A stretch of 64,000 nucleotides of DNA from IMGVR_UViG_3300017991_000048:124001-188000; one strand, 5' to 3'. Counted from the first letter of the stretch, positions 1,392 to 27,984 are shown. Program-made: numbers and translations. The notes: generated by a model from the sequence alone, not told the origin.

Positions 1392-2111
1392 GTGCCGGTT
1401 ACGCCGTGCATTGGCGACGTTTGGGAGAATAAAGAAGTTGGTGTCGAGGGTATAGTAGTCAGTCTCAAAGGCACTCGTTTAACTCTCGTAAGCCTCACAG
1501 GGAATCGAGCGACCATCAACTATAATCCGGAAACACTGTTTGGAGCGGTATCAATTTGGTGCCGTAAGGAACAAGCACCTCTGTTCACAATGCCTTGCTC
1601 ACGGTTGACCTGCGATAACCCGGCATTTATCCAATACCGACGCCCTGACAGCACATTAGTTGAAGTGGTGTGCCCCTCTCACGTCCCTAAAAACATCGAA
1701 TCGTTTACAGGTATCCTTCCCGATGAAACAGAACGAAATCACTTTGGCGGCTCGAATTGCTGGACCCAAGGCTGTGGTCAGGATACCACAGAGGTCATTG
1801 GGGAGCTTCCATCCGGGGAAGGTTCCATGTGGAACTGCCAGACGTGCGGCAGTTGGTGGATTGTCAGAGTGCTTACTTTTGCAGAGTACGAGGATAGATT
1901 TGGGACACGCTCTCCGGACCGTATCTTAAAACCAAAGGCACTGGTAAGCGATCTTTCTGGGTATAAACTAATTGAAATAGAAGAAACTACGGATCTTCAA
2001 CGCCGTGAAATGCACTACAGAATCTCTATACAACCGAAAGGTAGCAAGCGTTTAAATGGTCCGCGCCCTCGTACCTTATATGATTACCTAAAGCTGCCCG
2101 ACGACTTTTAG
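1392..2111 (+). CDS. hypothetical Zn-finger-containing protein
   Basis: AGGAG SD before GTG; Cys pairs (CSRLTC..C.SH, CWTQGC, CQTC); C-terminal TLYDYL motif. Confidence 0.6.
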   Translation: MPVTPCIGDVWENKEVGVEGIVVSLKGTRLTLVSLTGNRATINYNPETLFGAVSIWCRKEQAPLFTMPCSRLTCDNPAFIQYRRPDSTLVEVVCPSHVPKNIESFTGILPDETERNHFGGSNCWTQGCGQDTTEVIGELPSGEGSMWNCQTCGSWWIVRVLTFAEYEDRFGTRSPDRILKPKALVSDLSGYKLIEIEETTDLQRREMHYRISIQPKGSKRLNGPRPRTLYDYLKLPDDF

Positions 2112-2143
2112 CCAGGATTTTCTTATGGGTGGCTTGTAATAAG

Positions 2144-3418
2144 ATGCCCACTGATCGCATGGCTAAGGTTGTAGTTTCTCGGTTCCTGGAAGCCCGTGCC
2201 ACCAAGAATTACGAGTTCCTGAACGGCCTCTTTAAGGATCTCAGAGAGGTCTGGCATAAACTTCCAAAAAGTAACTGGTGGGGTCCGGGCTATGCGAAGG
2301 TGTCTAAACCTGACTCCGAAATGTACGCGAAAGAGTTTGCCCGTGCGTCGGGTAAACTTCTCAAAGAACTTAAGTTTACAGCCGAAAACCCGTTCCTAGC
2401 CAAGGCGATAAAAAAGTACGAGGGTAAGCTTCGATTGCTCCGTAAGATGTTAAAAGCGTGGTCAGAGGCTAAAGATTATGAGGAACTTCAAGCGGTACTC
2501 GAAAGTCAGGGCACAAAGTCTAAGAATGCTTGGCAAAAATTCATTGAGTATGAAGATCGAGTGCTCGGTCTTATAAGAGGTCTTGACACTGAAGCTGAAA
2601 CCACCATCAACATGGGGCCATATCGAGTCACTTTGATGACCGCCCATCACGACGAGTGGGACGCGGAAAAAGTTAAGAGGCTACAATACGTTTTAGAAAA
2701 AGTAGACGGCACCTTATCCCGTATGGGCTTGAAGTCATTAGCCGGGGGTAAAGTGTTTGCTTTTCCATCCAAAAGAGTTCCAGGGAGTGGGGCTGCCTTG
2801 GCTACTTACCACACGCATCAAGGAGTATTTGAAATTGCCGCTGAAGGAAAAGTTGCTGACCTTATATCTGTTATGCTTCACGAGATGGGGCACAAGGCTT
2901 ATTACACTTTGGTTGAGGGGCGAGGGCGTACAGCGTGGTCAGACTTCTTTGAAGGCGGCTTGGGAACGCCTGACGTTGATTCCATTATCGAAACCTGGGA
3001 GCGTTCATTAGAAAAGATTGACAACGAACGCGATAGACATCGAGGGCGCTTTTTAGCTTACTATATGCAAGAGTTGATGCCAAAGGGTGATGAGGGGGAC
3101 GCCATGTGGCTGAACATGTTGGCCAGACAACTAGGTATCAAAGAAAAGTTCAATCCCTGGACCGGTGCAGTAAGTAAGAAGTCAGTTCCGGGTTTGGACC
3201 AACTCATAGCTAACCGACATAAGGCTAAAGTTTTCCTCTACCCTGTTACCGCGTACAGCGGCACCAACGCTTCAGAACTGTTTGCGGAGACGTTTATGGA
3301 TTATGCAACCGGAGGTGGTAGGCGTGTTCACCCTCTGGTCGCACATGCTTTCAGGATGACTTTGCCAAAGTTCAAAATGGCCCAGTTATTAAACGAGTTC
3401 CCATCCATTCGGGAATAA
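2144..3418 (+). CDS. zincin-like metallopeptidase-domain protein with N-terminal VVSRF tag
   Basis: MLHEMGH (HExxH) plus downstream YSGTNASELFAETF (third-ligand Glu motif); N-terminal KVVVSRFLEA; start ATG 2144 or GTG 2129. Confidence 0.65.
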   Translation: MPTDRMAKVVVSRFLEARATKNYEFLNGLFKDLREVWHKLPKSNWWGPGYAKVSKPDSEMYAKEFARASGKLLKELKFTAENPFLAKAIKKYEGKLRLLRKMLKAWSEAKDYEELQAVLESQGTKSKNAWQKFIEYEDRVLGLIRGLDTEAETTINMGPYRVTLMTAHHDEWDAEKVKRLQYVLEKVDGTLSRMGLKSLAGGKVFAFPSKRVPGSGAALATYHTHQGVFEIAAEGKVADLISVMLHEMGHKAYYTLVEGRGRTAWSDFFEGGLGTPDVDSIIETWERSLEKIDNERDRHRGRFLAYYMQELMPKGDEGDAMWLNMLARQLGIKEKFNPWTGAVSKKSVPGLDQLIANRHKAKVFLYPVTAYSGTNASELFAETFMDYATGGGRRVHPLVAHAFRMTLPKFKMAQLLNEFPSIRE

Positions 3419-3824
3419 AAAGTTCGGTTGTGAACCCAAACGACACCCAGTGACTGGGCTCTTCTGGAACCTGTGGCGGCTTGCCGACGAGTTTGATTTT
3501 GTTAAATAATAGACCACACTGTTTGGCTATTTTGGTTGGATCTGGCCATTTTTTGCACTCTTCAAAGATAACATCTGCAACTTTATTAAATTGTTCAACT
3601 ACCCAATCCTCATGGCCGCGAGGCGCAAAAAAGTAGACATGATCTTGCACTGTACCGAAAGTTAGGGCGGAAATGAGTACAGCTTCTAACAACTCAGAGT
3701 CTAAGGTTTGGTCTGAAACTCCCCGAAATTTTGGGAACTTTTCATAAAAGCTGAGTTGCTTTGGCGTGGCTTCCCTGCTCAATAAAATCTGATGCCTTTT
3801 GCGAATTGGTGTATTAGTTGCCAT
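3372..3824 (-). CDS. hypothetical protein
   Basis: About 150-aa ORF; GTGTA motif 6 nt before ATG 3824. Confidence 0.5.
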   Translation of the reverse strand: MATNTPIRKRHQILLSREATPKQLSFYEKFPKFRGVSDQTLDSELLEAVLISALTFGTVQDHVYFFAPRGHEDWVVEQFNKVADVIFEECKKWPDPTKIAKQCGLLFNKIKLVGKPPQVPEEPSHWVSFGFTTELFIPEWMGTRLITGPF

Positions 3825-3830
3825 GTTCAA

Positions 3831-3841
3831 ACCCTACACCA
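3831..3841 (-). promoter_or_regulatory. putative phage promoter, GTGTA motif
   Basis: Minus strand TGGTGTAGGGT, 6 nt before ATG 3824. Confidence 0.5.
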
Positions 3842-3955
3842 AATTGAAGTTCTTGTGATAATAAACCTCCAAAAACAGCAACTTTAACGTCAAGTGCTGA
3901 ACTTGAAAGGAGGGTGTGTTGATTCATGCACTGACGGTACAACATAGGAGACTAT

Positions 3956-4801
3956 ATGAGGTACTTAAACTTAATCCTGTTTTGTGTAATCGCGTGTTCC
4001 AGTTCCGTCGCTCAGGACGTGAACCCACCGGAGCCACGTCTAGTTAAAAGACAGGAACCGATATTGTTTGAACCCGAACCCGAACCTAAAGCACCCGAAC
4101 CTCGTAAATCAGTTAGAAAGAGCCAACTCGAACTTGAGTGGCTAACCAAGATTTGTGTAAGTGAGGGCGGCTTCAACTACGATGAATGTGAGAAGATTCT
4201 ACAGACGTTAGAAAACATGAAAGAAGAGCATGAGCGTTCTCTTTTATCTATCATGTATGCCCAGTCTTCCCGTGTCACTCGCCAGAAGCCATTTACAAGC
4301 ACCCGCCAAATTTGGGTAAGCCATCTGCCAATGCAAGGTAAGAAGCCACCAGAAAAGGGGTGGGTTGAGTGTAAAAAGAAAGGCGTTCCCAAAGGGTGTA
4401 CCGGCTCATGGTTCACCACATTGAAGAAATGGCTTCCGTTCCGGGATAAGGTTCGTGAGCTTTATTACAGCGAGATCGTTCCGGAGCCGATACCGGGCCG
4501 TCCCATTCAATGGGGTGGTAATATGGACTACTGGATCGGGGTTGGCCGTAATTTCTGTCCGTTGAACAAAGGTGGTCTGTGGAAAAATACTTACTGGGGG
4601 AACCCAGATGACCCTGCCAATGAGGGTAAATGCTTGCCTATTTGCCAAAAGAGGGTCAAAAGCAGTAGAGTGCTATCAGCGGCTATTGCCAGCGGGAGAG
4701 CCAAGCAAAAGCCTCGAATCCAACAGTTACTAAATGGTGATCCCTTTATCCAGGATCTCAATAAAGGAGGGGTTACTGATGACGGAACAAGAACTGACTG
4801 A
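3956..4801 (+). CDS. exported protein, possible SleB/Hydrolase_2-like cell-wall hydrolase
   Basis: AGGAG SD; hydrophobic signal peptide (LILFCVIACSSS); Pro/Glu linker; LTKICVSEGG resembles the L-x-x-I-x-x-E catalytic helix of SleB-like transglycosylases. Confidence 0.4.
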   Translation: MRYLNLILFCVIACSSSVAQDVNPPEPRLVKRQEPILFEPEPEPKAPEPRKSVRKSQLELEWLTKICVSEGGFNYDECEKILQTLENMKEEHERSLLSIMYAQSSRVTRQKPFTSTRQIWVSHLPMQGKKPPEKGWVECKKKGVPKGCTGSWFTTLKKWLPFRDKVRELYYSEIVPEPIPGRPIQWGGNMDYWIGVGRNFCPLNKGGLWKNTYWGNPDDPANEGKCLPICQKRVKSSRVLSAAIASGRAKQKPRIQQLLNGDPFIQDLNKGGVTDDGTRTD

Positions 4802-5240
4802 ACTCCAGGCTCGTTGTATCAGCGCCAGAGCATACGCACGTAAGATCGCCAACGCGGAATATTATGGTGCTGAGTTGGAGATGGAAACCGGACCGGTCCC
4901 ACCTCCGATTGGAAGCCCAAAGTATTCTGCCACCCATTTGCTTGTTCTTATAGACAGAGCTTTTAAGATCCGACAAGGCTTGGAGCAGAAGGCCCCAGAA
5001 CCTAAAGCTGAAAAGCCCAAGGCCAAACCCAAGCCTAAGAAAGCCCCGGAGAAAAAGGCTGCGGCTAAGAAAAAGCCCGAACCTAAGAAAAAAGCTGAAA
5101 AGAAGAAAGTAGCTGCCAAGGCTAAGAAAGCGGCTCCAGCTAAGAAGGCTGCGGCAAAAAAGAAGAAAGCTGCCAAGAAAGCGGCTCCAGCTAAGAAGAA
5201 AGCTGCACCTAAGAAGGCTGCCAAGAAGAAAAAGAAGTAA
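4779..5240 (+). CDS. histone H1-like Lys/Ala-rich DNA-binding protein
   Basis: AGGAGG SD before ATG 4779; C-terminal half is a K/A/P-rich tail (KKAAPAKKAAAKKKK), with a 24-nt direct repeat at 5124 and 5175. Confidence 0.75.
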   Translation: MTEQELTELQARCISARAYARKIANAEYYGAELEMETGPVPPPIGSPKYSATHLLVLIDRAFKIRQGLEQKAPEPKAEKPKAKPKPKKAPEKKAAAKKKPEPKKKAEKKKVAAKAKKAAPAKKAAAKKKKAAKKAAPAKKKAAPKKAAKKKKK

Positions 5241-5242
5241 CT

Positions 5243-5464
5243 TTAGTACCTATCGTAGTGGTACTCTTCCCACATTTCATCCCAGTGGGCATGATGCTCT
5301 GCGGCACATTCTCGGCAAAGTGGGATCGGGGCGTTGGGATCGGGTATCTTATCGTCATGGATAAGCGCCATCCAGAGAGTGTAAGGTTTCTGAGCATAGG
5401 CTGTGCGGGAATCTTCCAATCTAACATTTTTATCTGACCCGCATCCTCGACAAATCATCGTCAT
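5243..5464 (-). CDS. small Zn-finger protein
   Basis: CRGC...CREC...HH; ATGA overlap with upstream stop; contains TLWMAL. Confidence 0.55.
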   Translation of the reverse strand: MTMICRGCGSDKNVRLEDSRTAYAQKPYTLWMALIHDDKIPDPNAPIPLCRECAAEHHAHWDEMWEEYHYDRY

Positions 5465-5934
5465 TGCTGGCACCGGAGTCGAACCATCTCCATAGCAGCG
5501 GTGAGCGTTTCAATCAGAGAGTTGCCACCTGGAACCTGATATTTATTGGCGTAGTAACGTTGATACCTTACCTTTTCCGCATAATGAGGTGCCCCAAAGA
5601 CCACTTTTCCGGAGCGCTTCCAGGTTCCCCACTCGTCATTTGTGGTCAAACCCGGTAAGCTTTCCATGTTTCGAGGGAGCCAAAACAGTATACAACCCGC
5701 TTGGTCAAGAGCGGCCTCTTCCCATACTATTTGGGCTTCATAGTCCGTATCGCCCCAGTCCCCATCAGCCGGTTCAGGGATGAATACGTACCCGTCGTAC
5801 CCCATGCTTTTTAGTGCTTGGAGGGCATGTGGACGCCAGCTTTGGACACTTTCGTTACGGGGGGTGGGTCCAGCCAGGAATATGGACTTAACCGTCTCTG
5901 TCGGGAGAGGATCTTGGGCATAAACGGGGATCAT
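5461..5934 (-). CDS. nucleoside 2-deoxyribosyltransferase-like protein
   Basis: SIFLAGPTPR..SWR, QIVWEEAAL, ILFW, TTNDEWG motifs typical of the NDT/Rcl-like family. Confidence 0.75.
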   Translation of the reverse strand: MIPVYAQDPLPTETVKSIFLAGPTPRNESVQSWRPHALQALKSMGYDGYVFIPEPADGDWGDTDYEAQIVWEEAALDQAGCILFWLPRNMESLPGLTTNDEWGTWKRSGKVVFGAPHYAEKVRYQRYYANKYQVPGGNSLIETLTAAMEMVRLRCQQ

Positions 5935-5950
5935 AGGATTTCCTGTATAA

Positions 5951-5961
5951 ATATTACACCG
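5951..5961 (-). promoter_or_regulatory. putative phage promoter CGGTGTAATAT
   Basis: 16 nt before ATG 5934 with AGGA SD; divergent partner at 6015. Confidence 0.65.
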
Positions 5962-6014
5962 ATTGCTATAAAAGTGAGAAAAATAACGTGTTAGAATTGA
6001 GTTTTAAGGTTCTC

Positions 6015-6025
6015 CGGTGTAATAG
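6015..6025 (+). promoter_or_regulatory. putative phage promoter CGGTGTAATAG
   Basis: 17 nt before ATG 6043 with AGGAGG SD. Confidence 0.65.
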
Positions 6026-6042
6026 TTAGTAGGAGGTCAATT

Positions 6043-6993
6043 ATGCACGAAGTCGAAAATATGTTTTACTACAAGGAGGTGCCCTGGCACGGTTTGGGGA
6101 AGTCCCTGGACAATCCCCCATCCGTGGAAATGGGTATCCTTGAAGCGGGGCTGGACTGGGAAGTTGAGCGAATTCAGTTGGTTATGGAAGGAACAGACAT
6201 TCAGGTTCCAGCCTACGCCAATGTTCGGTCAACCGATCGTAAGGTGTTGGGTGTCGTTGGCCCCACCTACCGACCACTTCAGAACATCGATGCTTTTCAG
6301 TGGTTCCAGCCTTACCTGGATTCCGGTCAGGTTACCCTGGAGACAGCCGGTTCCCTCAGAGGCGGCAGGCACATCTGGGTTCTGGCACGAATTCAGCAAG
6401 ACCCGGTTGAGATTGTCAAGGGTGACCCGGTGGTTGCGTACATCCTGTTGTCAAACTCTCATAACGGGACTGCCAGCATTCGGGCCGGGTTTACCGGGAT
6501 TCGCGTGGTCTGTGCCAACACAGTGGAAGCGGCTCACAGTGCCGGTTCAAGCAAGCTGCTCAAGATTCGGCACACTGAAAACGCCAACGAAGCCCTGGTG
6601 AGCGTCCGTGAGTCCATGGACGTTGCCCGGAGGGAGTTTGTGGCTACCACCGAGAGTATGCAGCAGATGGCTCGTAAGGGCGTGACTGTTGATACCATAA
6701 AGGAATACGTCAAAGAGGTGTTCCAGCCCAAGTTGAGCCTTGCCAACGATGAAGAGGCTCAGGCCAAAATCGACCGTCAGGTTGACCGGCTTATGCCGCT
6801 GATCGAGTCCGGTCGAGGTGCCGATGTACCGGGTGTCAGAGGAACAATGTGGGGTGTCTACAACAGCGTAACCGAGTTTCTGACCTGGGAGCGCGGTCGC
6901 AGCACCGATACCCGCCTGGAAAGCCTCTGGCTCGGTGATGCCGGGAACATTGCTCGGAGAGCCTACGACGTAGCCGTCAGGATGGCTGCATAA
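6043..6993 (+). CDS. DUF932 / TIGR03299 phage-plasmid family protein
   Basis: PWHGLG, AGLDWEV, LGVVGPTYRPLQN, ETAGSLRGG, LLSNSHNG, RVVCANT, RHT, GTMWGVYNSVTEF. Confidence 0.9.
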   Translation: MHEVENMFYYKEVPWHGLGKSLDNPPSVEMGILEAGLDWEVERIQLVMEGTDIQVPAYANVRSTDRKVLGVVGPTYRPLQNIDAFQWFQPYLDSGQVTLETAGSLRGGRHIWVLARIQQDPVEIVKGDPVVAYILLSNSHNGTASIRAGFTGIRVVCANTVEAAHSAGSSKLLKIRHTENANEALVSVRESMDVARREFVATTESMQQMARKGVTVDTIKEYVKEVFQPKLSLANDEEAQAKIDRQVDRLMPLIESGRGADVPGVRGTMWGVYNSVTEFLTWERGRSTDTRLESLWLGDAGNIARRAYDVAVRMAA

Positions 6994-7005
6994 ACACCCA
7001 AAAAC

Positions 7006-7025
7006 CCCCCGTCTTCGGACGGGGG
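7006..7025. terminator. GC-rich hairpin with C(UUCG)G tetraloop
   Basis: CCCCCGTC-TTCG-GACGGGGG directly after the DUF932 stop; A-tract upstream (U-tail on minus strand), no U-tail on plus strand. Confidence 0.55.
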
Positions 7026-7041
7026 AGCAGGTTCAGGTTCC

Positions 7042-8460
7042 GTGAAAATCGATAATGTCAGATTCTGGTTTGCGTGTAACAGTAGCAGCGTCCATAGCGT
7101 TGTAAGGTATCCGACCGACTCCGAAATAACCGACGACCTCTGTGGCGGGGCTGACTATTTTGGGTGGGAGCCCTTTGTAGCCGCCTCAAACAGAACCAAA
7201 AGAAGCTACCTCAAAACTTTACTCTACGGTCGTATGTTACACCTGAGGGAAACCCTGGAGACAGCAACGGAGACTGCTCGTTTGGTTGCTGATCAGGTAT
7301 TCCCGGACACACCCACCGGACACATTGATCACCAGTCAGTGCCTTTGATTCCAAGAAAGTATGGCTCTCACGAGCCATGTTATGAATTTCTCCGCGAGAT
7401 GACCGACTACATTCTACAGGATGGAGTGGTCATTCATGGCGGTAATGATAACAATGACGGAGAGGATGACCCGGCATACCCCAAGGAATCTAATGTTGAC
7501 TGGTACAAAAACATCCCTCTCGACCAAACCGGTGCTAACTGGGTGTGTAGAAAAGAAGGGGATTGGTGGGTTTTGTTCAACCGAATGAGCGGCACCAAGG
7601 TCACCCTGTCCTTTAAAGATGATGCAGCGCCCCGCACAAGGGCTTCGGTCCCTGAACTGGTAGACCTCAAGATAACAGACTTCTGTCCATACGGGTGTGC
7701 TTGGTGTTACCAGGGAAGCACCCACCAGGGCCGTCATGCTGAGGGCACCCGTGAGTGGTTGAATCTACTTGCAGTTGCACAGGTGTTTGAAGTTGCTATT
7801 GGTGGTGGGGAGCCGACCTTGCACCCAGAGTTCAAGAATTTGTTAAGGACGGCACCCTCTGGTTTGAGTTTGAACTTCTCTACACGGAACCTCGATTGGG
7901 TTTGTTATAACGCCGATCTTATCCGAGAGAAGTGTGGGGGTTTTGCTGTCTCAATTAGTGGAAACTATGCTGAAACTGAGCGCGTCATCAAAGCCCTGGA
8001 TAAAGCGAACCTGCTAGAGAAGGCCACACTGCAATATGTAATGAGCACGGCAAGTGATTGGGACTTTGAGGAAACTGTCAAAACCTGCCACGACTCGCGG
8101 GTTCGCCTCACACTGCTTGGCTACAAGACCACAGGGCGTGGTAAAGCCGCAACAAACCGCTTTGAGACAGCCACTCAAGATCGAGACGGGTGGGTAGAAG
8201 TGATCAGTGACCACAGTTACTATATGGCCATTGACACAGCTTTAGCTGCACGGACACCAGAGGACGTGTTCGATGAAACTTTCTTGAGACGAACTGAAGG
8301 CACTCATAGCATGTATATAGATGCGGTGGCCTCAAAAGCCAGCATCAGCAGTTATTCAGACGCTGATATGGTATCTGTTGAGCCAAGCATGGAATCTTTG
8401 ATCAAGGTGTTCAATGGGTTTGGTGAAGCAGAGACTCTTTGGCGGCATCTAAAAGAGTAA
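7042..8460 (+). CDS. radical SAM protein with N-terminal NSSS domain
   Basis: ITDFCPYGCAWCYQ (CxxxCxxC), IGGGEPTLHP, N-terminal RFWFACNSSSVHS; C-terminal TLWRHL. Confidence 0.85.
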   Translation: MKIDNVRFWFACNSSSVHSVVRYPTDSEITDDLCGGADYFGWEPFVAASNRTKRSYLKTLLYGRMLHLRETLETATETARLVADQVFPDTPTGHIDHQSVPLIPRKYGSHEPCYEFLREMTDYILQDGVVIHGGNDNNDGEDDPAYPKESNVDWYKNIPLDQTGANWVCRKEGDWWVLFNRMSGTKVTLSFKDDAAPRTRASVPELVDLKITDFCPYGCAWCYQGSTHQGRHAEGTREWLNLLAVAQVFEVAIGGGEPTLHPEFKNLLRTAPSGLSLNFSTRNLDWVCYNADLIREKCGGFAVSISGNYAETERVIKALDKANLLEKATLQYVMSTASDWDFEETVKTCHDSRVRLTLLGYKTTGRGKAATNRFETATQDRDGWVEVISDHSYYMAIDTALAARTPEDVFDETFLRRTEGTHSMYIDAVASKASISSYSDADMVSVEPSMESLIKVFNGFGEAETLWRHLKE

Positions 8461-8471
8461 TGGAGATTAAA

Positions 8472-8638: not shown

Positions 8639-8671
8639 TACGGCAACCAAGACCGACGTGAAGGCGATCCG

Positions 8672-8872: not shown

Positions 8873-8885
8873 GGAGAAATTCAAA

Positions 8886-9998: not shown

Positions 9999-10442
9999 AT
10001 GACACAAGGAGTACCGCCATTAGAAGAAGTCTTGCAGCAAGACTTCGAGCAGCAAGAGGACAAGGATCTTTGGGATCACCTCGTAAATAGACACGACGGG
10101 TTTCTTTATCGGTACGAGGAAAGGCGCTATGTGGACCAGCCCATAGAAATCGAGCTACGGAAACTACGAGTGCTCAAACAAACGGCCAAAGGGATCTGGA
10201 TTCAAGATTGGTATCACAAAAAAGGAAAAAGGTTTGTACTGTTCAATTCTCGGAAGAAGTACGCTTGTCTAACAGAAGAGGAAGCGCTTGAGTCTTTCAA
10301 AGCACGTAAAAGCAGGCAGGTCAAAATATTACGAAAGCAGTTGAACTGTGCTGAGGTCGCATTAAGTATAGCCAAAGGCGAAACACCTAATGGACAGGCG
10401 TTCGCATTACCGCCCGTCTGTTTCCGGGAGGAAGAAACATGA
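9999..10442 (+). CDS. hypothetical protein
   Basis: AAGGAG-rich operon context; contains DLWDHL; ATGA overlap with next gene. Confidence 0.55.
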   Translation: MTQGVPPLEEVLQQDFEQQEDKDLWDHLVNRHDGFLYRYEERRYVDQPIEIELRKLRVLKQTAKGIWIQDWYHKKGKRFVLFNSRKKYACLTEEEALESFKARKSRQVKILRKQLNCAEVALSIAKGETPNGQAFALPPVCFREEET

Positions 10443-18351: not shown

Positions 18352-18354
18352 CGT

Positions 18355-21222: not shown

Positions 21223-21225
21223 TTG

Positions 21226-21501: not shown

Positions 21502-21526
21502 ACTACCTTGAGCTAATAAATATGGA

Positions 21527-22501: not shown

Positions 22502-22505
22502 GTCT

Positions 22506-22516
22506 ATATTACAGTT
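22506..22516 (-). promoter_or_regulatory. putative phage promoter variant AACTGTAATAT
   Basis: 4 nt before ATG 22501. Confidence 0.45.
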
Positions 22517-22531
22517 GAGCGCCCCGATCCT

Positions 22532-22759
22532 CTAGCCTATTAGATGATCCCAGAGAGTTTTTCTCGCGGCTCGCTTGAGAGGGATAATCAAAGTCGCTCC
22601 GTCAAGCATCTGATACAACAACTGTGTTTGTTCAGGATCAATCCAGGCACGATCAGCTTGACGAAGCGCCGTTAACCCTTCTGACGATACTCTTGACATA
22701 GGCACTGACATTTCAGGCTGATCGTGCCGGTCTTTAACTGTTTTCCATCCGGGCTTCAC
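22532..22759 (-). CDS. small hypothetical protein with C-terminal TLWDHL
   Basis: GTGA overlap; ends RKTLWDHLIG. Confidence 0.55.
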   Translation of the reverse strand: MKPGWKTVKDRHDQPEMSVPMSRVSSEGLTALRQADRAWIDPEQTQLLYQMLDGATLIIPLKRAARKTLWDHLIG

Positions 22760-23415
22760 AGGGCTTTCTTTTTCTCACGGATTCTATCCAGCAGTTCGTT
22801 TCGTAACTTCTGGCTCACGACCTGATCTCGCTGCTCTTTGGTCGAAGCATACCACTCATTCAGGGCTTCCAGGCTTTCAATGGATTCCAGTTCTTGTAAT
22901 AGCGACTGCTGAATGCCATCCTCCTGAAACTCAGCGGGTGGCTTTTTGAACTCCTGAGCCTCTTTGCCGGTCGCCGCTTCTGGCACCTCTTCCAGCTTAC
23001 TGGTAATTTCCGTGGCCTTTCTAGCCACGTCTATCGCCATTTCCAGGGCTTTCTGGGCCTTATCCTCTTGGGCCTTATCTTGTTCCATTATGGCGTTCAG
23101 AAGCAGCTTTAGGGCGTCCATGGCGGCAATAACAGCATTGTACTGGGCCTGTGTCTTTATTCCTGGTAACTGCTGGCGTAACAGGTTGACTATTGCATCT
23201 TCCGGTTCCGTCGATTTGGCTTCTGGTCCTTGTGCCACCTTCTTAAGTTCGCCCCAATCGAGCCACTCGTAATCTTTGGTCAACTCTCGCCAGAGGGCTT
23301 CATGTTCCGGACCGCCTACTTGAAGGGCGTGAATGGCCAGTCGTCTGACTTCCGCTTTCCACGCCTCTTCCCCTTTTGTTTCTCGGAACTGTCTCAGGTA
23401 TTGTGCAATTTCCAT
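22756..23415 (-). CDS. helical hypothetical protein
   Basis: 219-aa ORF in operon. Confidence 0.6.
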   Translation of the reverse strand: MEIAQYLRQFRETKGEEAWKAEVRRLAIHALQVGGPEHEALWRELTKDYEWLDWGELKKVAQGPEAKSTEPEDAIVNLLRQQLPGIKTQAQYNAVIAAMDALKLLLNAIMEQDKAQEDKAQKALEMAIDVARKATEITSKLEEVPEAATGKEAQEFKKPPAEFQEDGIQQSLLQELESIESLEALNEWYASTKEQRDQVVSQKLRNELLDRIREKKKAL

Positions 23416-23416
23416 A

Positions 23417-23704
23417 TTAGTGTAACTTTTCCTTGTCCTGTTTCAGGATCTCATAAAAGCGCTTCGACACACTCCGGATGTTAATCGGGGGTACACCGGC
23501 TGCCCTCAAGTGCATCTCGTAAAGTCCTTTGAGTAGCTGAGCGCCTGCCTCTCGGTCCTGCATAACCTTCAGGCAGGCGGAGCAGTAGTTCACTTCATCC
23601 GGGGCGCTATCCCCGATCGCTTTCTTTTCAGCGTCAGTCAGCGTGAAGGTTTCGCCAGTTGCATACGGCTTCTGGCATATGATACAAAGGATTTCTTCAG
23701 TCAC
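23417..23704 (-). CDS. Zn-finger hypothetical protein
   Basis: CIIC...YCSAC. Confidence 0.55.
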   Translation of the reverse strand: MTEEILCIICQKPYATGETFTLTDAEKKAIGDSAPDEVNYCSACLKVMQDREAGAQLLKGLYEMHLRAAGVPPINIRSVSKRFYEILKQDKEKLH

Positions 23705-24299
23705 TAAAACGATCTTTCATGTATTGGAAGCCCAGGTTTCCGACTTCCAAGGTTTCGGATTCCAAAGCTTCACTCAGAAGGATGGCCTCTGATAGAGGCA
23801 TGAGAACTTGTGCCGTTTCGAGACGTTCCAACTGATTTTGAAGGTTAATATTGAACTCTATGACGATCTCTGAGCCCTGTGTCAATCTTATGTTTTCGCT
23901 CAACTCATGGGGATGGCACAAAAGAGGATCGCCGGTTGAGAACGTAGCTCGACAATATAGCGGTCTTCTCTCGTATGCGACACACAACTTTTCTTCCAGC
24001 AGTGGGCATGGAATGTTGCTCAGTAGCCAAATGTCGAAGGACAACTTCAATGTTTTGTCCCGATCTGCTTTGAGCTTTTTCTGGAGAGAAGGCGTCCATT
24101 TACCACGCGCAGTCAAATGTCGATACAACAACAGCCCTTCAAGTATTGTGATGAGAAAAGGGTGGTGGCAGCAATAAGAGCAGCCTTTTGAACAGCTAAG
24201 AAGATTGGACCCCTGTCGCAACTGCTGCTCAAACTCTTGCCCCATCTGAGTTTGAAGAGCCTTGGTTTCGGCTAAAGCTTTCTCAAATGGAAGTTTCAT
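23697..24299 (-). CDS. YkgJ / CxxCxxCC Fe-S cluster family protein
   Basis: CSKGCSYCC and CPLL....C.AYERRPLYCR. Confidence 0.85.
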   Translation of the reverse strand: MKLPFEKALAETKALQTQMGQEFEQQLRQGSNLLSCSKGCSYCCHHPFLITILEGLLLYRHLTARGKWTPSLQKKLKADRDKTLKLSFDIWLLSNIPCPLLEEKLCVAYERRPLYCRATFSTGDPLLCHPHELSENIRLTQGSEIVIEFNINLQNQLERLETAQVLMPLSEAILLSEALESETLEVGNLGFQYMKDRFSD

Positions 24300-24793
24300 T
24301 CGTCTTCCAATAGATGGTCGTACAGGTTGGCGGAAGTCCTCTCCGGTGGCGGTCTTTCTCTCACTATCCTCTTCTGGCTCATTGGCTGAAAGTCTCTCGG
24401 TACTTTTATGGGAAAGTTCACCTCCCTGGTGAAAACCTGATACCGGAGAATAAGCTGATCACCGAAGCCCAACCGCAGTTCAGGGTTTAGGTAAAGCGTC
24501 CCGCCTATCTGGAATTCATCAATCTTGGCCCAGTCCAGGAGCCATTTTAAAATGACAACACCCCCAGAGGACGGCCTGTGGACTTCCAGCAACCGTCCTT
24601 TCCTTGGGGGTGTTGTAATAGCAGGCCAATCGCGGAGCGGGTTGCAGGGAATCGGGCAATCCGCTTCCACGCCTAGTATCTGTTTTTCTCTGTCCTGGGA
24701 TTCGATAAACGCCGTATCCGTAGCTGGATCTATTTTATGTACCAACCACAGCTTGGATTGTCGTTGTATCAAATCTCCAGTTTGGATTGCCAT
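24296..24793 (-). CDS. hypothetical protein with C-terminal NLYDHL
   Basis: Ends SANLYDHLLEDE; ATGA overlap. Confidence 0.55.
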   Translation of the reverse strand: MAIQTGDLIQRQSKLWLVHKIDPATDTAFIESQDREKQILGVEADCPIPCNPLRDWPAITTPPRKGRLLEVHRPSSGGVVILKWLLDWAKIDEFQIGGTLYLNPELRLGFGDQLILRYQVFTREVNFPIKVPRDFQPMSQKRIVRERPPPERTSANLYDHLLEDE

Positions 24794-24796
24794 TGC

Positions 24797-25741
24797 CTAA
24801 GAAGAAGGAATGCCAAGATCCTTAGGGTCCATGCCCAACTCAGAAAACATATCATCAGCCGGGGTTGAGCCAACGTCTATGGGTTCTGAAGAAGCGACAA
24901 CGGGTTCCTCCGTAGTAGTCGTCTCTGGTTCAGAAGTTTGAGCTTCTGGAGCTTCTGGTTCCGAAGGCGTGACTGTCTGCTCTGGGGCGGTCTTTACCTC
25001 AGTTGGAGTCGTCTCCTTGACAGTCTCTGGAGCCGTCTCCTTACGCTCTTTTGGGGATTTTGTCCCTTTCCGTACCCAGTCAGCAACCTTGAACCGACCA
25101 CGATCAACCGTTACGAAAATCTTGGCCTTTACAGGGTTACCGTTCTTGTCCTTGACAGTCTTACCTTTGTCGTCCACCTCGTTCGGGGCATCCTTACCAC
25201 CTCGCGCCCCACTGAAAATTGAACTCATGTAAGCTGGAAGATTGTTGCTTGGCGGAGCTTCACCTCTCTCTTCGAGAGCCGCTGCTATATCACGAGCGCC
25301 CATGACCTTTGCTCCCATTATGCGAATAATAGTCTCCGTCAAAGTTAGGCCACCCTTACGGGCGTTTGCGCCTTTCTTTTTCGCGTTGGTCTTGGTGCTC
25401 TTCTTTTTGCTATTACCGCCTGTCTTACGTGCTGACACAGCTTTACGTGCCGCTGGAGCCTTGGCAGGTGGTTTCGGTTCTGGCTTCTTCTCACCGATCA
25501 GCAGCGTTTCAGCTTCCTGCTTGACCTCCGCATATTCAGCGGCGGCTGCATCATACTCAGACTGCGCTACAGCGAGAGCTTTATCAGCTACATCCAGGCG
25601 TCCCTTTGCCTCTTTGAGAGCGGCTTGGACGATGCCCTTAAATTGGCCCTGTAATGTCAGGACCGCTTTTCGTAGCTGGTCTTTGGCTGTGGCGGGTTTC
25701 TTCTTTGCCGGTGCAGCCTTTTTACGTCTTCTATTTCCCAT
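24797..25741 (-). CDS. coiled-coil + winged-HTH-like putative DNA-binding protein
   Basis: AGGAG SD before ATG 25741 (MGNRRRK); basic linker; LTLTETIIRIM...MGARDIAAALEERG...F..VDRGRF; acidic tail. Confidence 0.55.
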   Translation of the reverse strand: MGNRRRKKAAPAKKKPATAKDQLRKAVLTLQGQFKGIVQAALKEAKGRLDVADKALAVAQSEYDAAAAEYAEVKQEAETLLIGEKKPEPKPPAKAPAARKAVSARKTGGNSKKKSTKTNAKKKGANARKGGLTLTETIIRIMGAKVMGARDIAAALEERGEAPPSNNLPAYMSSIFSGARGGKDAPNEVDDKGKTVKDKNGNPVKAKIFVTVDRGRFKVADWVRKGTKSPKERKETAPETVKETTPTEVKTAPEQTVTPSEPEAPEAQTSEPETTTTEEPVVASSEPIDVGSTPADDMFSELGMDPKDLGIPSS

Positions 25742-25903
25742 TTTATTTGGTTCTCCTTTTCCATTTGATACTAGGCTTCTGCCCGTCCCTTTTACATATA
25801 CACCTTTAATCGGTGTTTTGAATCTAACTTCTTTTAAAGTTACACGCAATTAAATTAGGTAAGATTCTGAATTTAGGTCTTAGCGTGTAAATAGTTAGAA
25901 TCG

Positions 25904-26149
25904 TTATGATTCTTTGGTGTTAGGAAATTCCCGGTCCAAATCTACCTCATGGATAATGCCGAGTCTCCGGAGGTGCTGCTCTACCTGATTCGAACTTAAG
26001 GCTTTGCGTAATCCCTCAACTCTCCGGTCTTGACTCTTCTCGGCCCTCAGGATTGCTTGGCGTAATAACTTCTTCCAGCCGTCCTGACGGGTCGGCGGCT
26101 GAATCTGACGTTGAGATCTCTGCGGTTTCTGAATTAGGTGTACGGGCAT
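25904..26149 (-). CDS. hypothetical protein
   Basis: GAGG SD; overlaps the 3' end of 26016..26474 by 134 nt. Confidence 0.45.
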   Translation of the reverse strand: MPVHLIQKPQRSQRQIQPPTRQDGWKKLLRQAILRAEKSQDRRVEGLRKALSSNQVEQHLRRLGIIHEVDLDREFPNTKES

Positions 26150-26474
26150 TTTCTACCTCATTCAATAATCGGGCTTCTATCGAAAGAACCTGATCTAAGG
26201 GGATATCCATCCCGGTTGCAAACAGCCGTAAAAAGACTTGGCGTTGTGTTTCCAGCATGTTCCGTAAGGCTGTGTTCTCAGCTTCGGCCTTTTGTAACGC
26301 TTCGTTTGCAGCTTCCAACTGGATCATCAATTGGTCAATCTTTTCAAGCTCTGGCTTGATCCGTTGAGCCAGTTCAACGACCTCTTGGAGAGGTCCAAGT
26401 GCCGAAAGAATCTGGGTCAACTCTTTTGGTACAGGCTTTTTCTTCTCTTTCGCTCTACGGGTAGCTCGATTCAT
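26016..26474 (-). CDS. coiled-coil hypothetical protein
   Basis: GAGGA SD; MNRATRR start; heptad pattern. Confidence 0.55.
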   Translation of the reverse strand: MNRATRRAKEKKKPVPKELTQILSALGPLQEVVELAQRIKPELEKIDQLMIQLEAANEALQKAEAENTALRNMLETQRQVFLRLFATGMDIPLDQVLSIEARLLNEVENARTPNSETAEISTSDSAADPSGRLEEVITPSNPEGREESRPES

Positions 26475-26480
26475 TATTCC

Positions 26481-26879
26481 TCATTGAGAGAAAGGCGGCT
26501 GCCCACGAAAGACTGCATAGAACGGGATTGAGCCAGGATTGTTAGGCTGATTGAATTGTGCCTGTTCTGCGTCCATCCGCTCCACTACCGGGAGCCGTGG
26601 GGTGGTCCTGGCCAGTTCTAACAGGTGAGGGTCGGAGGTAATTCTTATCAGGTCTTGACGGGCTTTCTCGTCACGCTGGAGAATGTATATAATCTGACAA
26701 TCTTCCAGAGTATCAAGCATACAGACCCCTGGAGCATCCCCATCGGAAGGGCCGTCACCTCTTTCCACCCAAACATTGTCCGAGCCGGGAACGTACAAAT
26801 CACATCGGCTGGTGGGTGCTTCACATTCAGGCAGTTCAGGGCAGACACACGGGGAAGTTTGACAGCTAACACAAGACAT
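26481..26879 (-). CDS. Cys-rich hypothetical protein
   Basis: GAGGTG SD; N-terminal CVSC..PCVC. Confidence 0.55.
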   Translation of the reverse strand: MSCVSCQTSPCVCPELPECEAPTSRCDLYVPGSDNVWVERGDGPSDGDAPGVCMLDTLEDCQIIYILQRDEKARQDLIRITSDPHLLELARTTPRLPVVERMDAEQAQFNQPNNPGSIPFYAVFRGQPPFSQ

Positions 26880-26905
26880 TTTTCACCTCTTAACTAAGCC
26901 GATTC

Positions 26906-27163
26906 TTAGGAGGATAACCAATCTGCCCGGAATATGATAGTGTGGGAGTGCTCTTTTTGACATTGGAGGTCCATCCGCGCATAAAGAAACGGCACTCTAC
27001 GCCTCAGAGCGTGAGCGAAGACTTCGATTTCCTTCTCACATTCAGGGCAGCGAGCATCACGCAGACGCTTTAGCATAGCGTCTACATTAGCTACTGCAAT
27101 GGCTGACTCGACCTCTTCGTCGGTTAGATCTTCTGAATCATCTTCAAGTTCTGGAATAAACAT
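26906..27163 (-). CDS. small Zn-finger protein
   Basis: CPEC...CQKEH. Confidence 0.5.
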   Translation of the reverse strand: MFIPELEDDSEDLTDEEVESAIAVANVDAMLKRLRDARCPECEKEIEVFAHALRRRVPFLYARMDLQCQKEHSHTIIFRADWLSS

Positions 27164-27984
27164 TATGTCGTATCACGTCTTTCGGGGGATAGCTTTTCAT
27201 CCCCGGCATAACAATAGGAACAGTTGTAAGCACATGCTTCATTGATTGTAAAAGGATCAACCATTTTGACACAGCCGCATTCTTCAGTAAGTAAAGGCTT
27301 AGTATCTGTCACGTGATCCCAAAGGTTTCGGTTTATAAAATCAGTTTCCGGGACACAAACCCCCGTCGAGAATAAACCATTCGCTTCTACTAAATCTTGA
27401 TCGTCAGCGCACAGAAAAAGCTGTATCTTACACTTCACAGCCTGTTCTGTCATTTTGTTCAGTATCTCTATTTTCTCTTCGGTAGAACGTGTCTCTGGCA
27501 CCCGGTCATTTTCCTGGAGAAAAGACACATACACGCTCTTTATCCCGGCTCTAACAGCGTAGGAAAGAAGGTCATAGAATCGCGAAAGTACGCTATGAAA
27601 TGGCAACAAGGGAACGGGGCTGAACCGCCAATAGACTTTCTCAAATGTTTCAGAGGCTTGAGACATTAGAATCCCGGCTTGTGTGCTATTTGGTGGGCCG
27701 TCCTCCGCTTCCGTCCATCCGGTAGCGGTCATTTGCACGACCACATTGTAAGGTTCCAGAAGTTTACTACTTTTAATCAAATTCGTAGGATCTTTGGTCC
27801 AGAAAACAAGCCCTAATGTATCTTTGGGGTCCAGGGACCAGATCTCAGGTACGGCTGTTTGAGGGTCAAAAGCCGTCATTTTCCCGGCCAATAGGCGGTC
27901 TATAAACCAGTCCCATTTCCCGGCACAAACATCAGTCCACCGGGAAAGGCTATATGGAAGCCGGGATATGACACCACTCCGCAT
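27163..27984 (-). CDS. DUF1848-like (radical SAM-related) protein
   Basis: SLSRWTD, VFWTKDP, WRFSPV, LCAD, CGC and terminal CAYNCSYCYA. Confidence 0.8.
   Translation of the reverse strand: MRSGVISRLPYSLSRWTDVCAGKWDWFIDRLLAGKMTAFDPQTAVPEIWSLDPKDTLGLVFWTKDPTNLIKSSKLLEPYNVVVQMTATGWTEAEDGPPNSTQAGILMSQASETFEKVYWRFSPVPLLPFHSVLSRFYDLLSYAVRAGIKSVYVSFLQENDRVPETRSTEEKIEILNKMTEQAVKCKIQLFLCADDQDLVEANGLFSTGVCVPETDFINRNLWDHVTDTKPLLTEECGCVKMVDPFTINEACAYNCSYCYAGDEKLSPERRDTT

What the first reader, a model, noticed from the sequence alone, without database searches (positions are those of the whole stretch)
2073..27330. Second short linear motif [TND]-L-[WY]-[DR]-[HY]-L, mostly C-terminal, in a non-overlapping set of proteins
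Seen at C-termini: RTLYDYLKLPDDF* (1392+), ETLWRHLKE* (radical SAM 7042+), KTLWDHLIG* (22532-), ANLYDHLLEDE* (24296-). Also seen: KDLWDHLV (N-terminal, 9999+), RNLWDHV (apparent loop in DUF1848-like 27163-), and weaker YTLWMAL (5243-). None of these proteins carries the RY/RF tag. Inference: a docking motif, appended to unrelated proteins, for a common hub such as a clamp, polymerase, ClpX/AAA adaptor or compartment import factor. The phage may therefore use two orthogonal peptide address codes.
Basis: partly seen in the sequence, partly recalled or inferred. Interest (0 to 1): 0.68.

Follow-up and report, generated by a model that had tools for sequence, protein, structure and literature searches.

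The report
Shared C-terminal peptide tag in huge phage
About fifty mostly unrelated small proteins of this 398-kb phage end in the same six-residue peptide (T-L-W-D-H-L), which looks like a portable docking label copied from the conserved tail of one phage protein family, though the partner it binds is still unknown.

Summary
All six strong instances are at the stated coordinates. The seventh, YTLWMAL, is not a member.

- **Scale.** The window is the edge of a genome-wide pattern. The 398,071-bp phage has 51 ORFs ending in [KR]-[TDN]-L-W-[DE]-H-[LV]-[KRS]-[ED]-x(0-6)-stop, mostly at 22-105 kb. Gene calls give 49 motifs against 0.8 in shuffled proteins, and 40 C-terminal against 0.03.
- **Level of selection.** Synonymous codons vary freely, so selection acts on the peptide.
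- **Carriers.** They fall into 38 BLAST clusters and are nearly all ORFans.
- **Portability.** The tag is appended to a radical SAM enzyme only in this phage, inserted as an 11-residue loop in DUF1848 only here, and N-terminal in another protein.
- **Relatives.** A sister phage (85% portal identity) has about 54 tagged proteins, but only 11 bodies are shared. More distant relatives keep the tag on about 5 core proteins.
- **Prototype.** One core carrier (window 24296-24793) belongs to a family of 172 metagenomic clusters. Most end in T-x-[YF]-D-[RH]-L-L plus acidic residues.

Docking to one common receptor is inferred. The receptor is unidentified. The phage's own ClpX, with its zinc-finger docking domain and no ClpP, is the leading named candidate (about 25%).

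The parts
2073..2090 (+). Tag TLYDYL followed by KLPDDF-stop, at the C-terminus of core protein C (ORF 1392-2111, 239 aa, no family match)
   Evidence: Orthologs keep it as TLFDYLKMDDF (G001) and NLFDHLRRGDDDDI (G003).
8434..8451 (+). Tag TLWRHL followed by KE-stop, appended to the radical SAM enzyme (ORF 7042-8460, 472 aa)
   Evidence: Orthologs in G001 and G003 end about 12 residues earlier without it.
10065..10082 (+). N-terminal copy DLWDHL (residues 23-28 of ORF 9999-10442, 147 aa)
   Evidence: Conserved as KTLWDHLL in the G003 ortholog.
22541..22558 (-). Tag TLWDHL followed by IG-stop, at the C-terminus of the 75-aa ORF 22532-22759
24296..24793 (-). Core protein B (165 aa): Tudor/KOW-like barrel, Ig-like sandwich, and tail NLYDHLLEDE (motif at 24311-24328). 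Proposed prototype of the tag.
27310..27327 (-). NLWDHV inside an 11-residue loop insertion of the DUF1848 protein (ORF 27163-27984)
   Evidence: The insertion is absent from the G001, G002 and G003 orthologs.
34197..34544 (-). Weak variant RLWQHL followed by GETLGRLI-stop, in a 115-aa ORF (genome 158197-158544)
   Evidence: Borderline member.
31179..32432 (-). Phage ClpX (417 aa) with N-terminal C4 zinc finger, GYVG pore loop and MGF (IGF-like) loop. Candidate receptor; binding not shown.
   Evidence: No ClpP in the genome.
35691..37253 (-). Classic-clade AAA ATPase (520 aa) with an uncharacterised 230-aa N-terminal region. Alternative candidate receptor; untested.
23697..24299 (-). CxxCxxCC-domain protein, conserved immediate downstream neighbour of B
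   Evidence: The same gene pair occurs on unrelated contigs L183, L191 and L192.

Best explanation
The motif is a portable short linear peptide tag with consensus [KR]-[TDN]-L-W-[DE]-H-[LV]-[KRS]-[ED]. It usually sits 1-8 residues from the C-terminus, behind a Pro/Glu/Lys-rich linker.

**Shown**
- It is selected as a peptide.
- It occurs on about 50 mostly unrelated, mostly soluble, fast-turning-over accessory proteins of this phage and its sister phage.
- It can be gained by appending, by loop insertion, or at an N-terminus.
- It matches, position for position, the conserved C-terminal tail of a widespread uncultured-phage protein family (protein B, window 24296-24793). That family tail reads [PRK]-[TSN]-hydrophobic-[YF]-D-[RH]-L-[LM] followed by acidic residues.

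**Inferred**
- The tail is a two-turn amphipathic helix that docks into a groove on one common receptor, the natural partner of B's tail.
- In the G000/G001 lineage a Trp version of that tail was copied onto dozens of accessory proteins, so they all reach the same receptor.

**Guess (about 25%)**
- The receptor is the N-terminal zinc-finger domain of the phage's own ClpX. In cellular ClpX this module binds short peptides at the end of flexible tails, as with the SspB XB tail.
- Tagged proteins would then be tethered to ClpX, working with host ClpP through its MGF loop or working alone as an unfoldase.
- The outcome would be timed unfolding or degradation of the tagged proteins, or their use as adaptors that bring bound host proteins to ClpX.

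The confidence figure is for the docking-tag reading. The identity of the receptor is much less certain.
For: - **Enrichment and terminal bias.** 49 motifs against 0.8 expected, and 40 C-terminal against 0.03; the sister phage has 46 against 0.7.
- **Peptide-level selection.** Codons are free: GAT 22 / GAC 17, CAT 28 / CAC 19, and all six Leu codons are used.
- **Unrelated carriers.** 38 BLAST clusters from 51 carriers. Only the radical SAM enzyme has a significant Pfam hit among 49 scanned.
- **Linker and tail composition.** The linker is enriched in P, E and K; the tail is enriched in E and D.
- **Solubility.** 47 of 51 carriers lack a TM-like segment.
- **Gain on orthologs.** Radical SAM and DUF1848 loop insertion. 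An N-terminal copy is conserved in G003.
- **Turnover.** Only 11 of 49 tagged G000 proteins have a body homolog among 54 tagged G001 proteins. Bodies average 47% identity while the tag cores stay near-identical.
- **Core carriers in distant relatives.** LWDHLQEEEF, LFDHLTDDF, LFDHLLDDED and others.
- **B family.** 172 representative clusters. 113 of the 150 listed carry the tail, in the same register as the tag.
- **B model.** pLDDT 94.5, with residues 157-162 modelled as a helix.
- **ClpX.** NCBIfam equivalog score 465.7 bits against a cut-off of 359; zf-C4_ClpX 43.1 bits; 2e-104 to a solved ClpX chain.
- **Co-occurrence.** ClpX is present in every long contig that carries B, in one syntenic block. 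ClpX and B are both absent from the motif-less relatives LR745208.1 and Tunturi_5.
Against: - No binding has been shown for any partner. The one complex prediction (ClpX zinc-finger dimer plus a tagged tail) returned 'no answer'.
- The co-occurrence of ClpX with the tag is shared by about 120 other core genes, so it is not specific.
- Phage G has ClpX and ClpP but neither B nor this tag.
- From my own knowledge of the field, not tested here: known ClpX-docking peptides and degrons (SspB XB LRVVK, ssrA LAA, MuA RRKKAI) do not resemble the tag.
- In the deep-alignment model B's tail is predicted with fairly high confidence. It may therefore pack on B itself, which would make B's body, not ClpX, the receptor.
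- Part of the count (11 members) is one paralog family that inherited the tag by descent.
Confidence: 0.6

Rival explanations
1. SSB-style acidic tail. The ancestral tail (aromatic and Leu core followed by D/E residues, often ending in F, I or V) docks on a basic or DNA-binding surface of a replisome protein such as the phage family A DNA polymerase or the DnaB-like helicase. T7 gp2.5 and gp4 tails and the bacterial SSB tip work this way. Tagged accessory proteins would be recruited to, or compete at, replication sites.
For: - Core carriers and the B family end in runs of D/E, often with a late Phe: TDDF, EEEF, LPDDF, DDDF, and YDRLL-DD-F-DD.
- Several core carriers lie beside the replication block of PolA, DnaB-like helicase, SNF2 helicase and topoisomerase IB.
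- No recognisable SSB family is encoded, so an unrecognised SSB may be among the carriers.
Against: - In the expanded set the tail is short and about neutral: net charge is 0 or basic in 28 of 51 carriers, and the terminal residue is not fixed.
- B's fold is a Tudor/KOW-like barrel plus an Ig-like sandwich, not an OB fold.
- Fifty ORFan accessory proteins are an odd clientele for a replisome.
Confidence: 0.13
2. The receptor is a conserved host protein, for example host ClpX, RNA polymerase, a chaperone or a division protein. The tag would let many phage effectors plug into one host hub.
For: - The B-family tail is kept across homologs whose bodies are only 22-45% identical. That fits a slowly evolving partner.
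- B's N-terminal barrel resembles the RNAP-binding Tudor domains of UvrD/PcrA and CarD, at a generic Z of about 7.
Against: - The host is unknown, so nothing could be tested.
- The fold match is at background level by the tool's own guidance.
- From my own knowledge: the motif matches no known bacterial hub motif, including the clamp QL[SD]LF, the SSB tip and the FtsZ C-terminal peptide.
Confidence: 0.15
3. Capsid-loading or ejection signal. The tag binds the inner face of the procapsid or a scaffold, as encapsulin cargo-loading peptides do. The carriers would be packaged and injected as early effectors.
For: - The architecture (domain, flexible linker, short C-terminal peptide) matches encapsulin cargo peptides; this comparison rests on my own knowledge.
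- The carriers are a fast-evolving, effector-like set.
- Huge capsids are known to package many proteins (abstracts listed).
Against: - All carriers lie in the accessory arms, and none lies between 158 kb and 387 kb, where the structural genes sit.
- Many carriers sit behind the GGTGTAATA promoter-like motif, which is rare in the structural block.
- Metabolic enzymes such as radical SAM and DUF1848 carry the tag.
- N-terminal and loop copies exist.
Confidence: 0.08
4. No common function. The shared ending is only inherited from one expanded gene family whose bodies have diverged beyond recognition.
For: - An 11-member and a 3-member paralog family exist among the carriers.
- Phage G shows that a tandem paralog family can share a long C-terminal helix, YWKENDRYLAKIL.
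Against: - The radical SAM and DUF1848 proteins belong to well-defined unrelated families and gained the tag only in this phage.
- The tag stays nearly invariant while everything upstream is unalignable. That requires strong purifying selection on the peptide itself.
- N-terminal and loop copies exist.
Confidence: 0.03
5. A nucleic-acid signal rather than a peptide. TGG-GAT-CAC-CT equals the 3' end of 16S rRNA, so it could pair with downstream Shine-Dalgarno sequences for translational coupling.
For: A minority of copies read GGATCACCT, and the motif lies just upstream of the next gene.
Against: - Third positions vary freely: GAT/GAC 22/17, CAT/CAC 28/19, six Leu codons, and E replacing D.
- The reading frame relative to the stop codon is always the same.
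- The reversed-pattern control gives 0-1 hits.
Confidence: 0.01

Closest known systems
SspB XB tail and the ClpX zinc-binding domain (adaptor tethering)
   Same: A folded domain, a flexible linker and a short C-terminal docking peptide. A ClpX with that N-terminal domain is encoded by the phage.
   Different: The sequence is unrelated to LRVVK. One peptide is shared by about 50 different proteins instead of one adaptor. Binding is not shown.
SSB C-terminal tip, and the T7 gp2.5 and gp4 acidic tails
   Same: A conserved hydrophobic or aromatic residue plus an acidic C-terminal tail after a linker, used as a docking handle. The B-family tail looks like this.
   Different: The direction is reversed: many proteins carry the tail and presumably one protein reads it. 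The expanded copies have lost most of the acidity. No OB fold.
Clamp-binding motifs (QL[SD]LF, PIP box)
   Same: A short motif, often C-terminal, shared by many unrelated proteins that dock on one hub.
   Different: A different consensus. The phage encodes no beta clamp. The clientele here is ORFan accessory proteins rather than DNA enzymes.
Encapsulin cargo-loading peptides and the T4 capsid-targeting sequence
   Same: A short terminal peptide on unrelated cargo that serves as an address label in an HK97-fold shell system.
   Different: A different consensus. The carriers are not linked to the structural genes. Internal and N-terminal copies occur.
Poxvirus ankyrin/PRANC (F-box-like) proteins
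   Same: A large, fast-evolving viral protein repertoire that shares a small C-terminal module to plug into one cellular machine.
   Different: PRANC is a folded domain of about 40 residues that binds the host SCF complex. Here the module is a 6-9 residue peptide in a bacteriophage, and the partner is unknown.
Phage G tandem family ending in YWKENDRYLAKIL
   Same: Many proteins of a related huge phage share a C-terminal helix.
   Different: Those are about 20 clear paralogs in one tandem array, conserved by descent over 15-20 residues. They are not unrelated proteins.

Membership tests
ClpX (candidate receptor, window 31179-32432) | Whole-protein score above the curated equivalog cut-off | tested here: met
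   NF003745 scores 465.7 bits against a cut-off of 359. TIGR00382 scores 424.8 bits against 370.75.
ClpX (candidate receptor, window 31179-32432) | N-terminal C4 zinc finger (the adaptor and substrate docking domain) | tested here: met
   PF06689 scores 43.1 bits against a cut-off of 27, over residues 7-44. Cys8, Cys11, Cys31 and Cys34 are invariant in five phage homologs.
ClpX (candidate receptor, window 31179-32432) | GYVG pore-1 loop and an IGF-type ClpP-docking loop | tested here: met
   GYVG and MGF are seen in the translation, aligned to the same loops of a solved ClpX chain.
ClpX (candidate receptor, window 31179-32432) | RKH loop (ssrA carboxylate recognition) and a cognate ClpP gene | tested here: not met
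   The RKH position reads MGTKA in the alignment. No ClpP was found by Pfam search or by tblastn with phage G ClpP.
SspB-type ClpX-tethering tail | Short C-terminal peptide behind a flexible linker | tested here: met
   The motif lies 1-8 residues from the stop. The linker is enriched in P, E and K.
SspB-type ClpX-tethering tail | Binds the ClpX zinc-binding domain | tested here: inconclusive
   The complex prediction scored 0.00 with the verdict 'no answer'. This is neither support nor evidence against.
ssrA-like C-terminal degron | Fixed non-polar residues at the very C-terminus next to the free carboxylate | tested here: not met
   Tail length is variable (1-12 residues), the ends are charged or polar, and internal and N-terminal copies exist.
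Beta-clamp-binding motif | QL[SD]LF-like consensus and a clamp to bind | tested here: not met
   The consensus is [TDN]LW[DE]H[LV]. There is no DNA_pol3_beta match in the complete genome.
SSB-type acidic C-terminal tip | Acidic run ending in a hydrophobic residue, on an OB-fold ssDNA-binding protein | tested here: not met
   The acidic run is present in the B family and the core carriers, but B is a Tudor/KOW barrel plus an Ig-like sandwich. The expanded tags are about neutral. No PF00436, PF10991 or PF08804 match.
Chimallivirus nucleus import | Chimallin shell, PhuZ and PicA present | tested here: not met
   tblastn with phiKZ gp54, gp39, gp69, gp55 and gp74 finds nothing better than E 0.16 in G000, G001 and G003. 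BLAST sensitivity is limited.
Encapsulin-like cargo-loading peptide | Cargo genes linked to the shell or structural genes; tag strictly terminal | tested here: not met
   No carrier lies between 158 and 387 kb, where the structural genes sit. Loop and N-terminal copies exist. Binding to the capsid cannot be tested here.
Single paralogous family sharing a C-terminal domain | Carriers homologous along their bodies | tested here: not met
   38 BLAST clusters from 51 carriers. Mean column identity is 7% in a joint alignment. The radical SAM and DUF1848 proteins are members of other families.

The most novel reading that the evidence does not exclude
A huge phage runs a proteome-wide address system. 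A six-residue tag, copied from the tail of a conserved phage protein, routes about 50 rapidly evolving accessory proteins to the phage's own ClpX unfoldase. The carriers would either be destroyed on schedule or, more strikingly, act as a library of SspB-like adaptors that hand bound host proteins, such as defence proteins, to ClpX and host ClpP. That would be a viral targeted-degradation toolkit in bacteria.
Probability: 0.15. Interest if true: 0.92.

Novelty: new variant of a known kind. Interest (0 to 1): 0.8.

Why it matters
Short docking peptides shared by many proteins are well known for cellular hubs such as clamps, SSB and ClpX adaptors. I found no report of a phage in which roughly one protein in twelve carries the same terminal hexapeptide. 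The string LWDHL gave no relevant paper, and the wider motif and phage searches found nothing comparable.

If the tag is an address label, it offers three things:
- A ready-made handle to find the function of about 100 ORFan proteins in two huge phages, through one pull-down.
- A natural example of how a virus wires new genes into an existing machine by adding six residues.
- A compact peptide and receptor pair that could be reused as a tool.

It also defines a widespread, unannotated phage protein family (B) with a conserved tail, whose partner is worth finding.

Tried and rejected
- **Complex prediction.** ClpX residues 1-62 (two copies) plus Zn plus the last 37 residues of a tagged protein scored 0.00 with the verdict 'no answer'. 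This is not evidence either way.
- **Family scans of carriers.** Pfam and PHROGs scans of the tagged and core proteins found nothing apart from the radical SAM and DUF1848 families.
- **Other searches with proteins B and C.** A word-based homolog search for B found only itself and G001. An Atlas look-alike search for C gave no usable lead. A PDB sequence search for C found nothing. tblastn of B, C and two remote B homologs against GenBank phages gave no match.
- **Phyletic profiling for the receptor.** 95 untagged genes are shared only by the two tag-rich phages. 120 core genes are absent from the two tag-less relatives. That is too many to point at one gene. The best-conserved ones are enzymes: exoribonuclease, epimerase, Pol X, patatin, PS decarboxylase and SpoU.
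- **Direct-coupling analysis.** The B family alignment (144 sequences) was dominated by gap artefacts and was discarded.
- **Context search.** Most remote B homologs sit on contigs of 1-3 kb, so their neighbourhoods are uninformative.
- **IMG/VR DNA-pattern scan.** Multi-copy contigs were found only in the known sister lineage. Single hits elsewhere are internal and look like chance.
- **Ideas rejected on the evidence.** Anti-Shine-Dalgarno or RNA element. Chimallivirus import. Clamp binding. Membrane-targeting helix, because the tag is too short and acidic and 47 of 51 carriers are soluble.

Full report
**Setting**

The window is bases 124,001-188,000 of a single 398,071-bp contig with 48.4% G+C. 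IMG/VR classes the contig as complete, with direct terminal repeats. It is a tailed phage. It encodes a portal, a prohead protease, GroEL, an NAD-dependent ligase and ribonucleotide reductase. The window also holds a family A DNA polymerase, a DnaB-like helicase, an SNF2 helicase, a topoisomerase IB-like protein, ClpX, a second AAA ATPase and a J-domain protein.

Portal searches give these relatives:

| Relative | Size | Portal identity | Label |
|---|---|---|---|
| IMG/VR contig | 416 kb | 85% | G001 |
| IMG/VR fragment | 323 kb | 81% | G002 |
| IMG/VR complete genome | 411 kb | 62% | G003 |
| LR745208.1 | 485 kb | 50% | W01 |
| Tunturiibacter phage Tunturi_5 | 309 kb | 36% | W02 |
| Bacillus phage G | 498 kb | 26% | W03 |

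Yes. Six of the seven listed instances are at the stated places. YTLWMAL is an internal, non-matching string.

In the window alone, 5 matches to L[WY][DE][HY][LIV] compare with 0.11 in shuffled proteins.

A six-frame scan of the whole genome finds 51 ORFs with the motif within 12 residues of the stop. Nearly all lie at 22-105 kb. A few lie at 125-158 kb, which is the window, and at the two genome ends.

With my own gene calls, the phage has 49 motifs against 0.8 expected, and 40 C-terminal against 0.03 expected.

The anchored consensus is [KR]-[TDN]-L-W-[DE]-H-[LV]-[KRS]-[ED], followed by 0-6 more residues. It is preceded by a stretch enriched in Pro, Glu and Lys.

**Peptide or nucleic acid?**

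I first suspected an RNA signal, because TGG-GAT-CAC-CT is the 3' end of 16S rRNA. The codons rule this out:
- Asp is GAT 22 times and GAC 17 times.
- His is CAT 28 times and CAC 19 times.
- All six Leu codons are used at both Leu positions.
- Glu often replaces Asp.

Selection is therefore on the peptide.

**One family or many?**

After removing the tag, the 51 carriers fall into 38 BLAST clusters. One family has 11 members in tandem at 53-69 kb, one has three members, one has two, and 35 are singletons.

A joint alignment has 7% mean column identity, and the tag supplies its only conserved block. Pfam recognises only the radical SAM enzyme among the 49 scanned. PHROGs recognises none of the ten carriers scanned. 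47 of 51 carriers have no TM-like segment.

**Portability**

This is the strongest argument for a functional tag.
- The radical SAM enzyme (window 7042-8460) ends in ...GEAETLWRHLKE. Its orthologs in G001 (58% identical) and G003 (47% identical) stop about 12 residues earlier with unrelated ends.
- In the DUF1848 protein (window 27163-27984) the motif sits in an 11-residue insertion that is missing from the G001, G002 and G003 orthologs.
- In ORF 9999-10442 the motif is N-terminal, and it is kept there in the G003 ortholog.

The same peptide has thus been appended, inserted into a loop, and placed at an N-terminus.

**Comparative picture**

- The DNA pattern for L-W-D-H-[LIV] occurs 45 times in G001, against 1 for a reversed control. 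It occurs 2 times in G003, once in G002 and 0 times in LR745208.1.
- De novo scans of C-terminal tripeptides find the signal only in G000 and G001.
- G001 has about 54 tagged proteins. Only 11 of the 49 tagged G000 proteins have a body homolog among them. Those bodies average 47% identity, while the tag cores are nearly identical.
- 28 of 43 tagged G000 genes have no homolog of any kind in G001. The repertoire turns over fast and the label is constant.
- In G003 and G002 a looser form survives on a handful of core proteins: LWDHLQEEEF, LWDCLTEEED, LFDHLTDDF, LFDHLRRGDDDDI, LFDHLLDDED, LYSHLLTDDDT.
- An IMG/VR scan with a tag-coding DNA pattern finds multi-copy contigs only in the G001 lineage.

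**The prototype**

One core carrier, protein B (window 24296-24793, 165 aa, tail NLYDHLLEDE), was used for a profile search of 1.8 billion representative proteins.
- It has 172 homologs. All are about 160-175 aa.
- Of the 150 listed, 113 have an aromatic-x-x-hydrophobic core followed by at least two acidic residues within their last 24 residues. 54 have [YF]-D-[RH]-L outright.
- The family tail logo is [PRK]-[TSN]-[AVLI]-[YF]-D-[RH]-L-[LM]-[DEG]-D-D-(D/F)....
- This is the same register as the tag: basic, Thr, hydrophobic, aromatic, Asp, His/Arg, Leu, x, acidic.
- One remote member ends in NLWDHLDE.

With an 85-sequence alignment, AlphaFold2 models B at pLDDT 94.5 and pTM 0.83. The model has an N-terminal Tudor/KOW/SH3-like barrel (residues 1-50), an Ig-like sandwich (55-134) and a helix at residues 157-162, which is the motif. 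Structure searches give only generic matches at Z of about 7.

The family is absent from PHROGs, from GenBank phages, and from LR745208.1, Tunturi_5 and phage G.

I conclude that the tag is a Trp-bearing copy of the ancient B-family tail, spread in one lineage onto dozens of other proteins.

**What reads the tag?**

This is inference. The anatomy is that of a docking peptide: a short amphipathic motif on a flexible linker that works at several positions in a protein. Because it copies B's tail, its receptor should be B's natural partner.

- **Not a clamp.** The phage encodes none.
- **Not a chimallivirus-type nucleus.** No chimallin, PhuZ, PicA or phiKZ-type RNAP was found by tblastn.
- **Phage ClpX, the leading named candidate.**
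  - It is a bona fide ClpX: equivalog score 465.7 bits, 2e-104 to a solved ClpX chain, GYVG pore loop, and an IGF-like MGF loop.
  - It has the N-terminal C4 zinc finger. In cellular ClpX this domain binds short peptides at the ends of flexible tails; that point is established knowledge and was not tested here.
  - It lacks the RKH loop, and the phage has no ClpP. It would have to use host ClpP or act as an unfoldase.
  - ClpX and B lie in one conserved block in all six long contigs that carry B. The block reads CN-hydrolase, ClpX..., DUF1848..., B, CxxCxxCC..., topoisomerase.
  - The two tag-less relatives lack both ClpX and B.
- **Weaknesses of the ClpX case.**
  - About 120 other core genes share that phyletic pattern.
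  - Phage G has ClpXP without B or the tag.
  - The only complex prediction allowed returned 'no answer'.
- **Other live candidates.**
  - The 520-aa classic AAA ATPase with an unknown N-terminal domain.
  - B's own body, since the tail is modelled with fairly high confidence.
  - A replisome protein, by analogy with acidic SSB-type tails.
  - A conserved host protein.
  - The procapsid. This is disfavoured, because no carrier lies in the structural region and many carriers sit behind the promoter-like motif typical of the non-structural arms.

**Verdict**

The 'docking tag on unrelated proteins' reading is well supported by sequence evidence. The hub is unknown. The 'two orthogonal codes' idea is not supported by a simple terminal-dipeptide count.

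I know of no described phage with such a proteome-wide terminal tag, and literature searches found none. I rate it a new variant of a known kind, that kind being short docking motifs and terminal tags. It is of high interest and directly testable with a peptide pull-down.

Noticed in passing
Genome-wide; in the window e.g. 5959 (-), 6016 (+), 14084 (+), 27999 (-), 32450 (-), 37781 (-): A strongly enriched intergenic motif, (T)TCGGTGTA[AG]TA, is about 10-fold over-represented in intergenic DNA. An ATG follows 7-8 nt after it in 19 of 68 copies. This looks like a -10-type promoter that would give leaderless or near-leaderless mRNAs. A second class reads TAGAG-N(12-20)-[AT]GTGTAATA. Both are common at 0-180 kb and 345-398 kb and rare in the structural block at 190-340 kb. 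ClpX and many tagged genes sit behind the first class.
   Followed up: partly
Window 31179-32432 (-), 35691-37253 (-), 46479-47519 (-); genome 350965-352551 (-): The phage carries a proteostasis set: ClpX without ClpP, a Cdc48/PAN-like single-domain AAA ATPase, a J-domain protein and GroEL. ClpX has MGF in place of IGF and lacks the RKH loop.
   Followed up: partly
Bacillus phage G (NC_023719.1), 353-368 kb plus 26-33 kb; loci L158 and L174-L175: About 20 tandem paralogs of about 200 aa end in a conserved helix, ...YWKENDRYLAKIL... This is a different phenomenon, one family sharing an ending by descent, but it is superficially similar.
   Followed up: partly
Genome 53-69 kb (loci L004 and L005): An 11-member tandem paralog family of tagged proteins shares a helix, [LI]-D-x-[VL]-W-[DE]-x-[FWY]-Q, just before the linker and tag. 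Several other small carriers have FCS/TRASH-like Cys pairs right before the linker (FCSDGC, YCSLAC, FCGKKC, YCTPAC, WCSDKC).
   Followed up: partly
Window 23697-24793 (-); loci L183, L191, L192: Protein B is always followed by a CxxCxxCC-domain (PF03692) protein, even on unrelated short contigs. This is a conserved gene pair of unknown function.
   Followed up: partly
Genome-wide; window 5243-5473 (-) ends in YDRY: Only 5 of 546 called proteins end in R-[YFW]: KYRF twice, DRY, GGRF and KRW. That is close to what composition predicts (about 3, my own estimate), so a terminal RY/RF dipeptide is not obviously enriched.
   Followed up: partly
Window 50683-55038 (-): A 1451-aa core protein, 62-78% identical in the relatives, has no Pfam match.
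   Followed up: no
Genome 106681-107652, 108332-109210, 380799-381878, 69181-69744: Genes shared only by the two tag-rich phages include a family X (Pol beta-like) polymerase, a patatin-like phospholipase, a phosphatidylserine decarboxylase and an Rv2179c-like 3'-5' exoribonuclease.
   Followed up: no
Genome 119066-119497 (-) and 120606-121166 (+): Two further core proteins carry looser tails. The first ends in TIFEHLTNDNDILQ (DLFAHLDDDIV in G001). The second ends in GLWAALTEDDVGILD (GLWGAVLDDDF in G001). The true set of tail-bearing proteins is therefore wider than the strict motif.
   Followed up: partly
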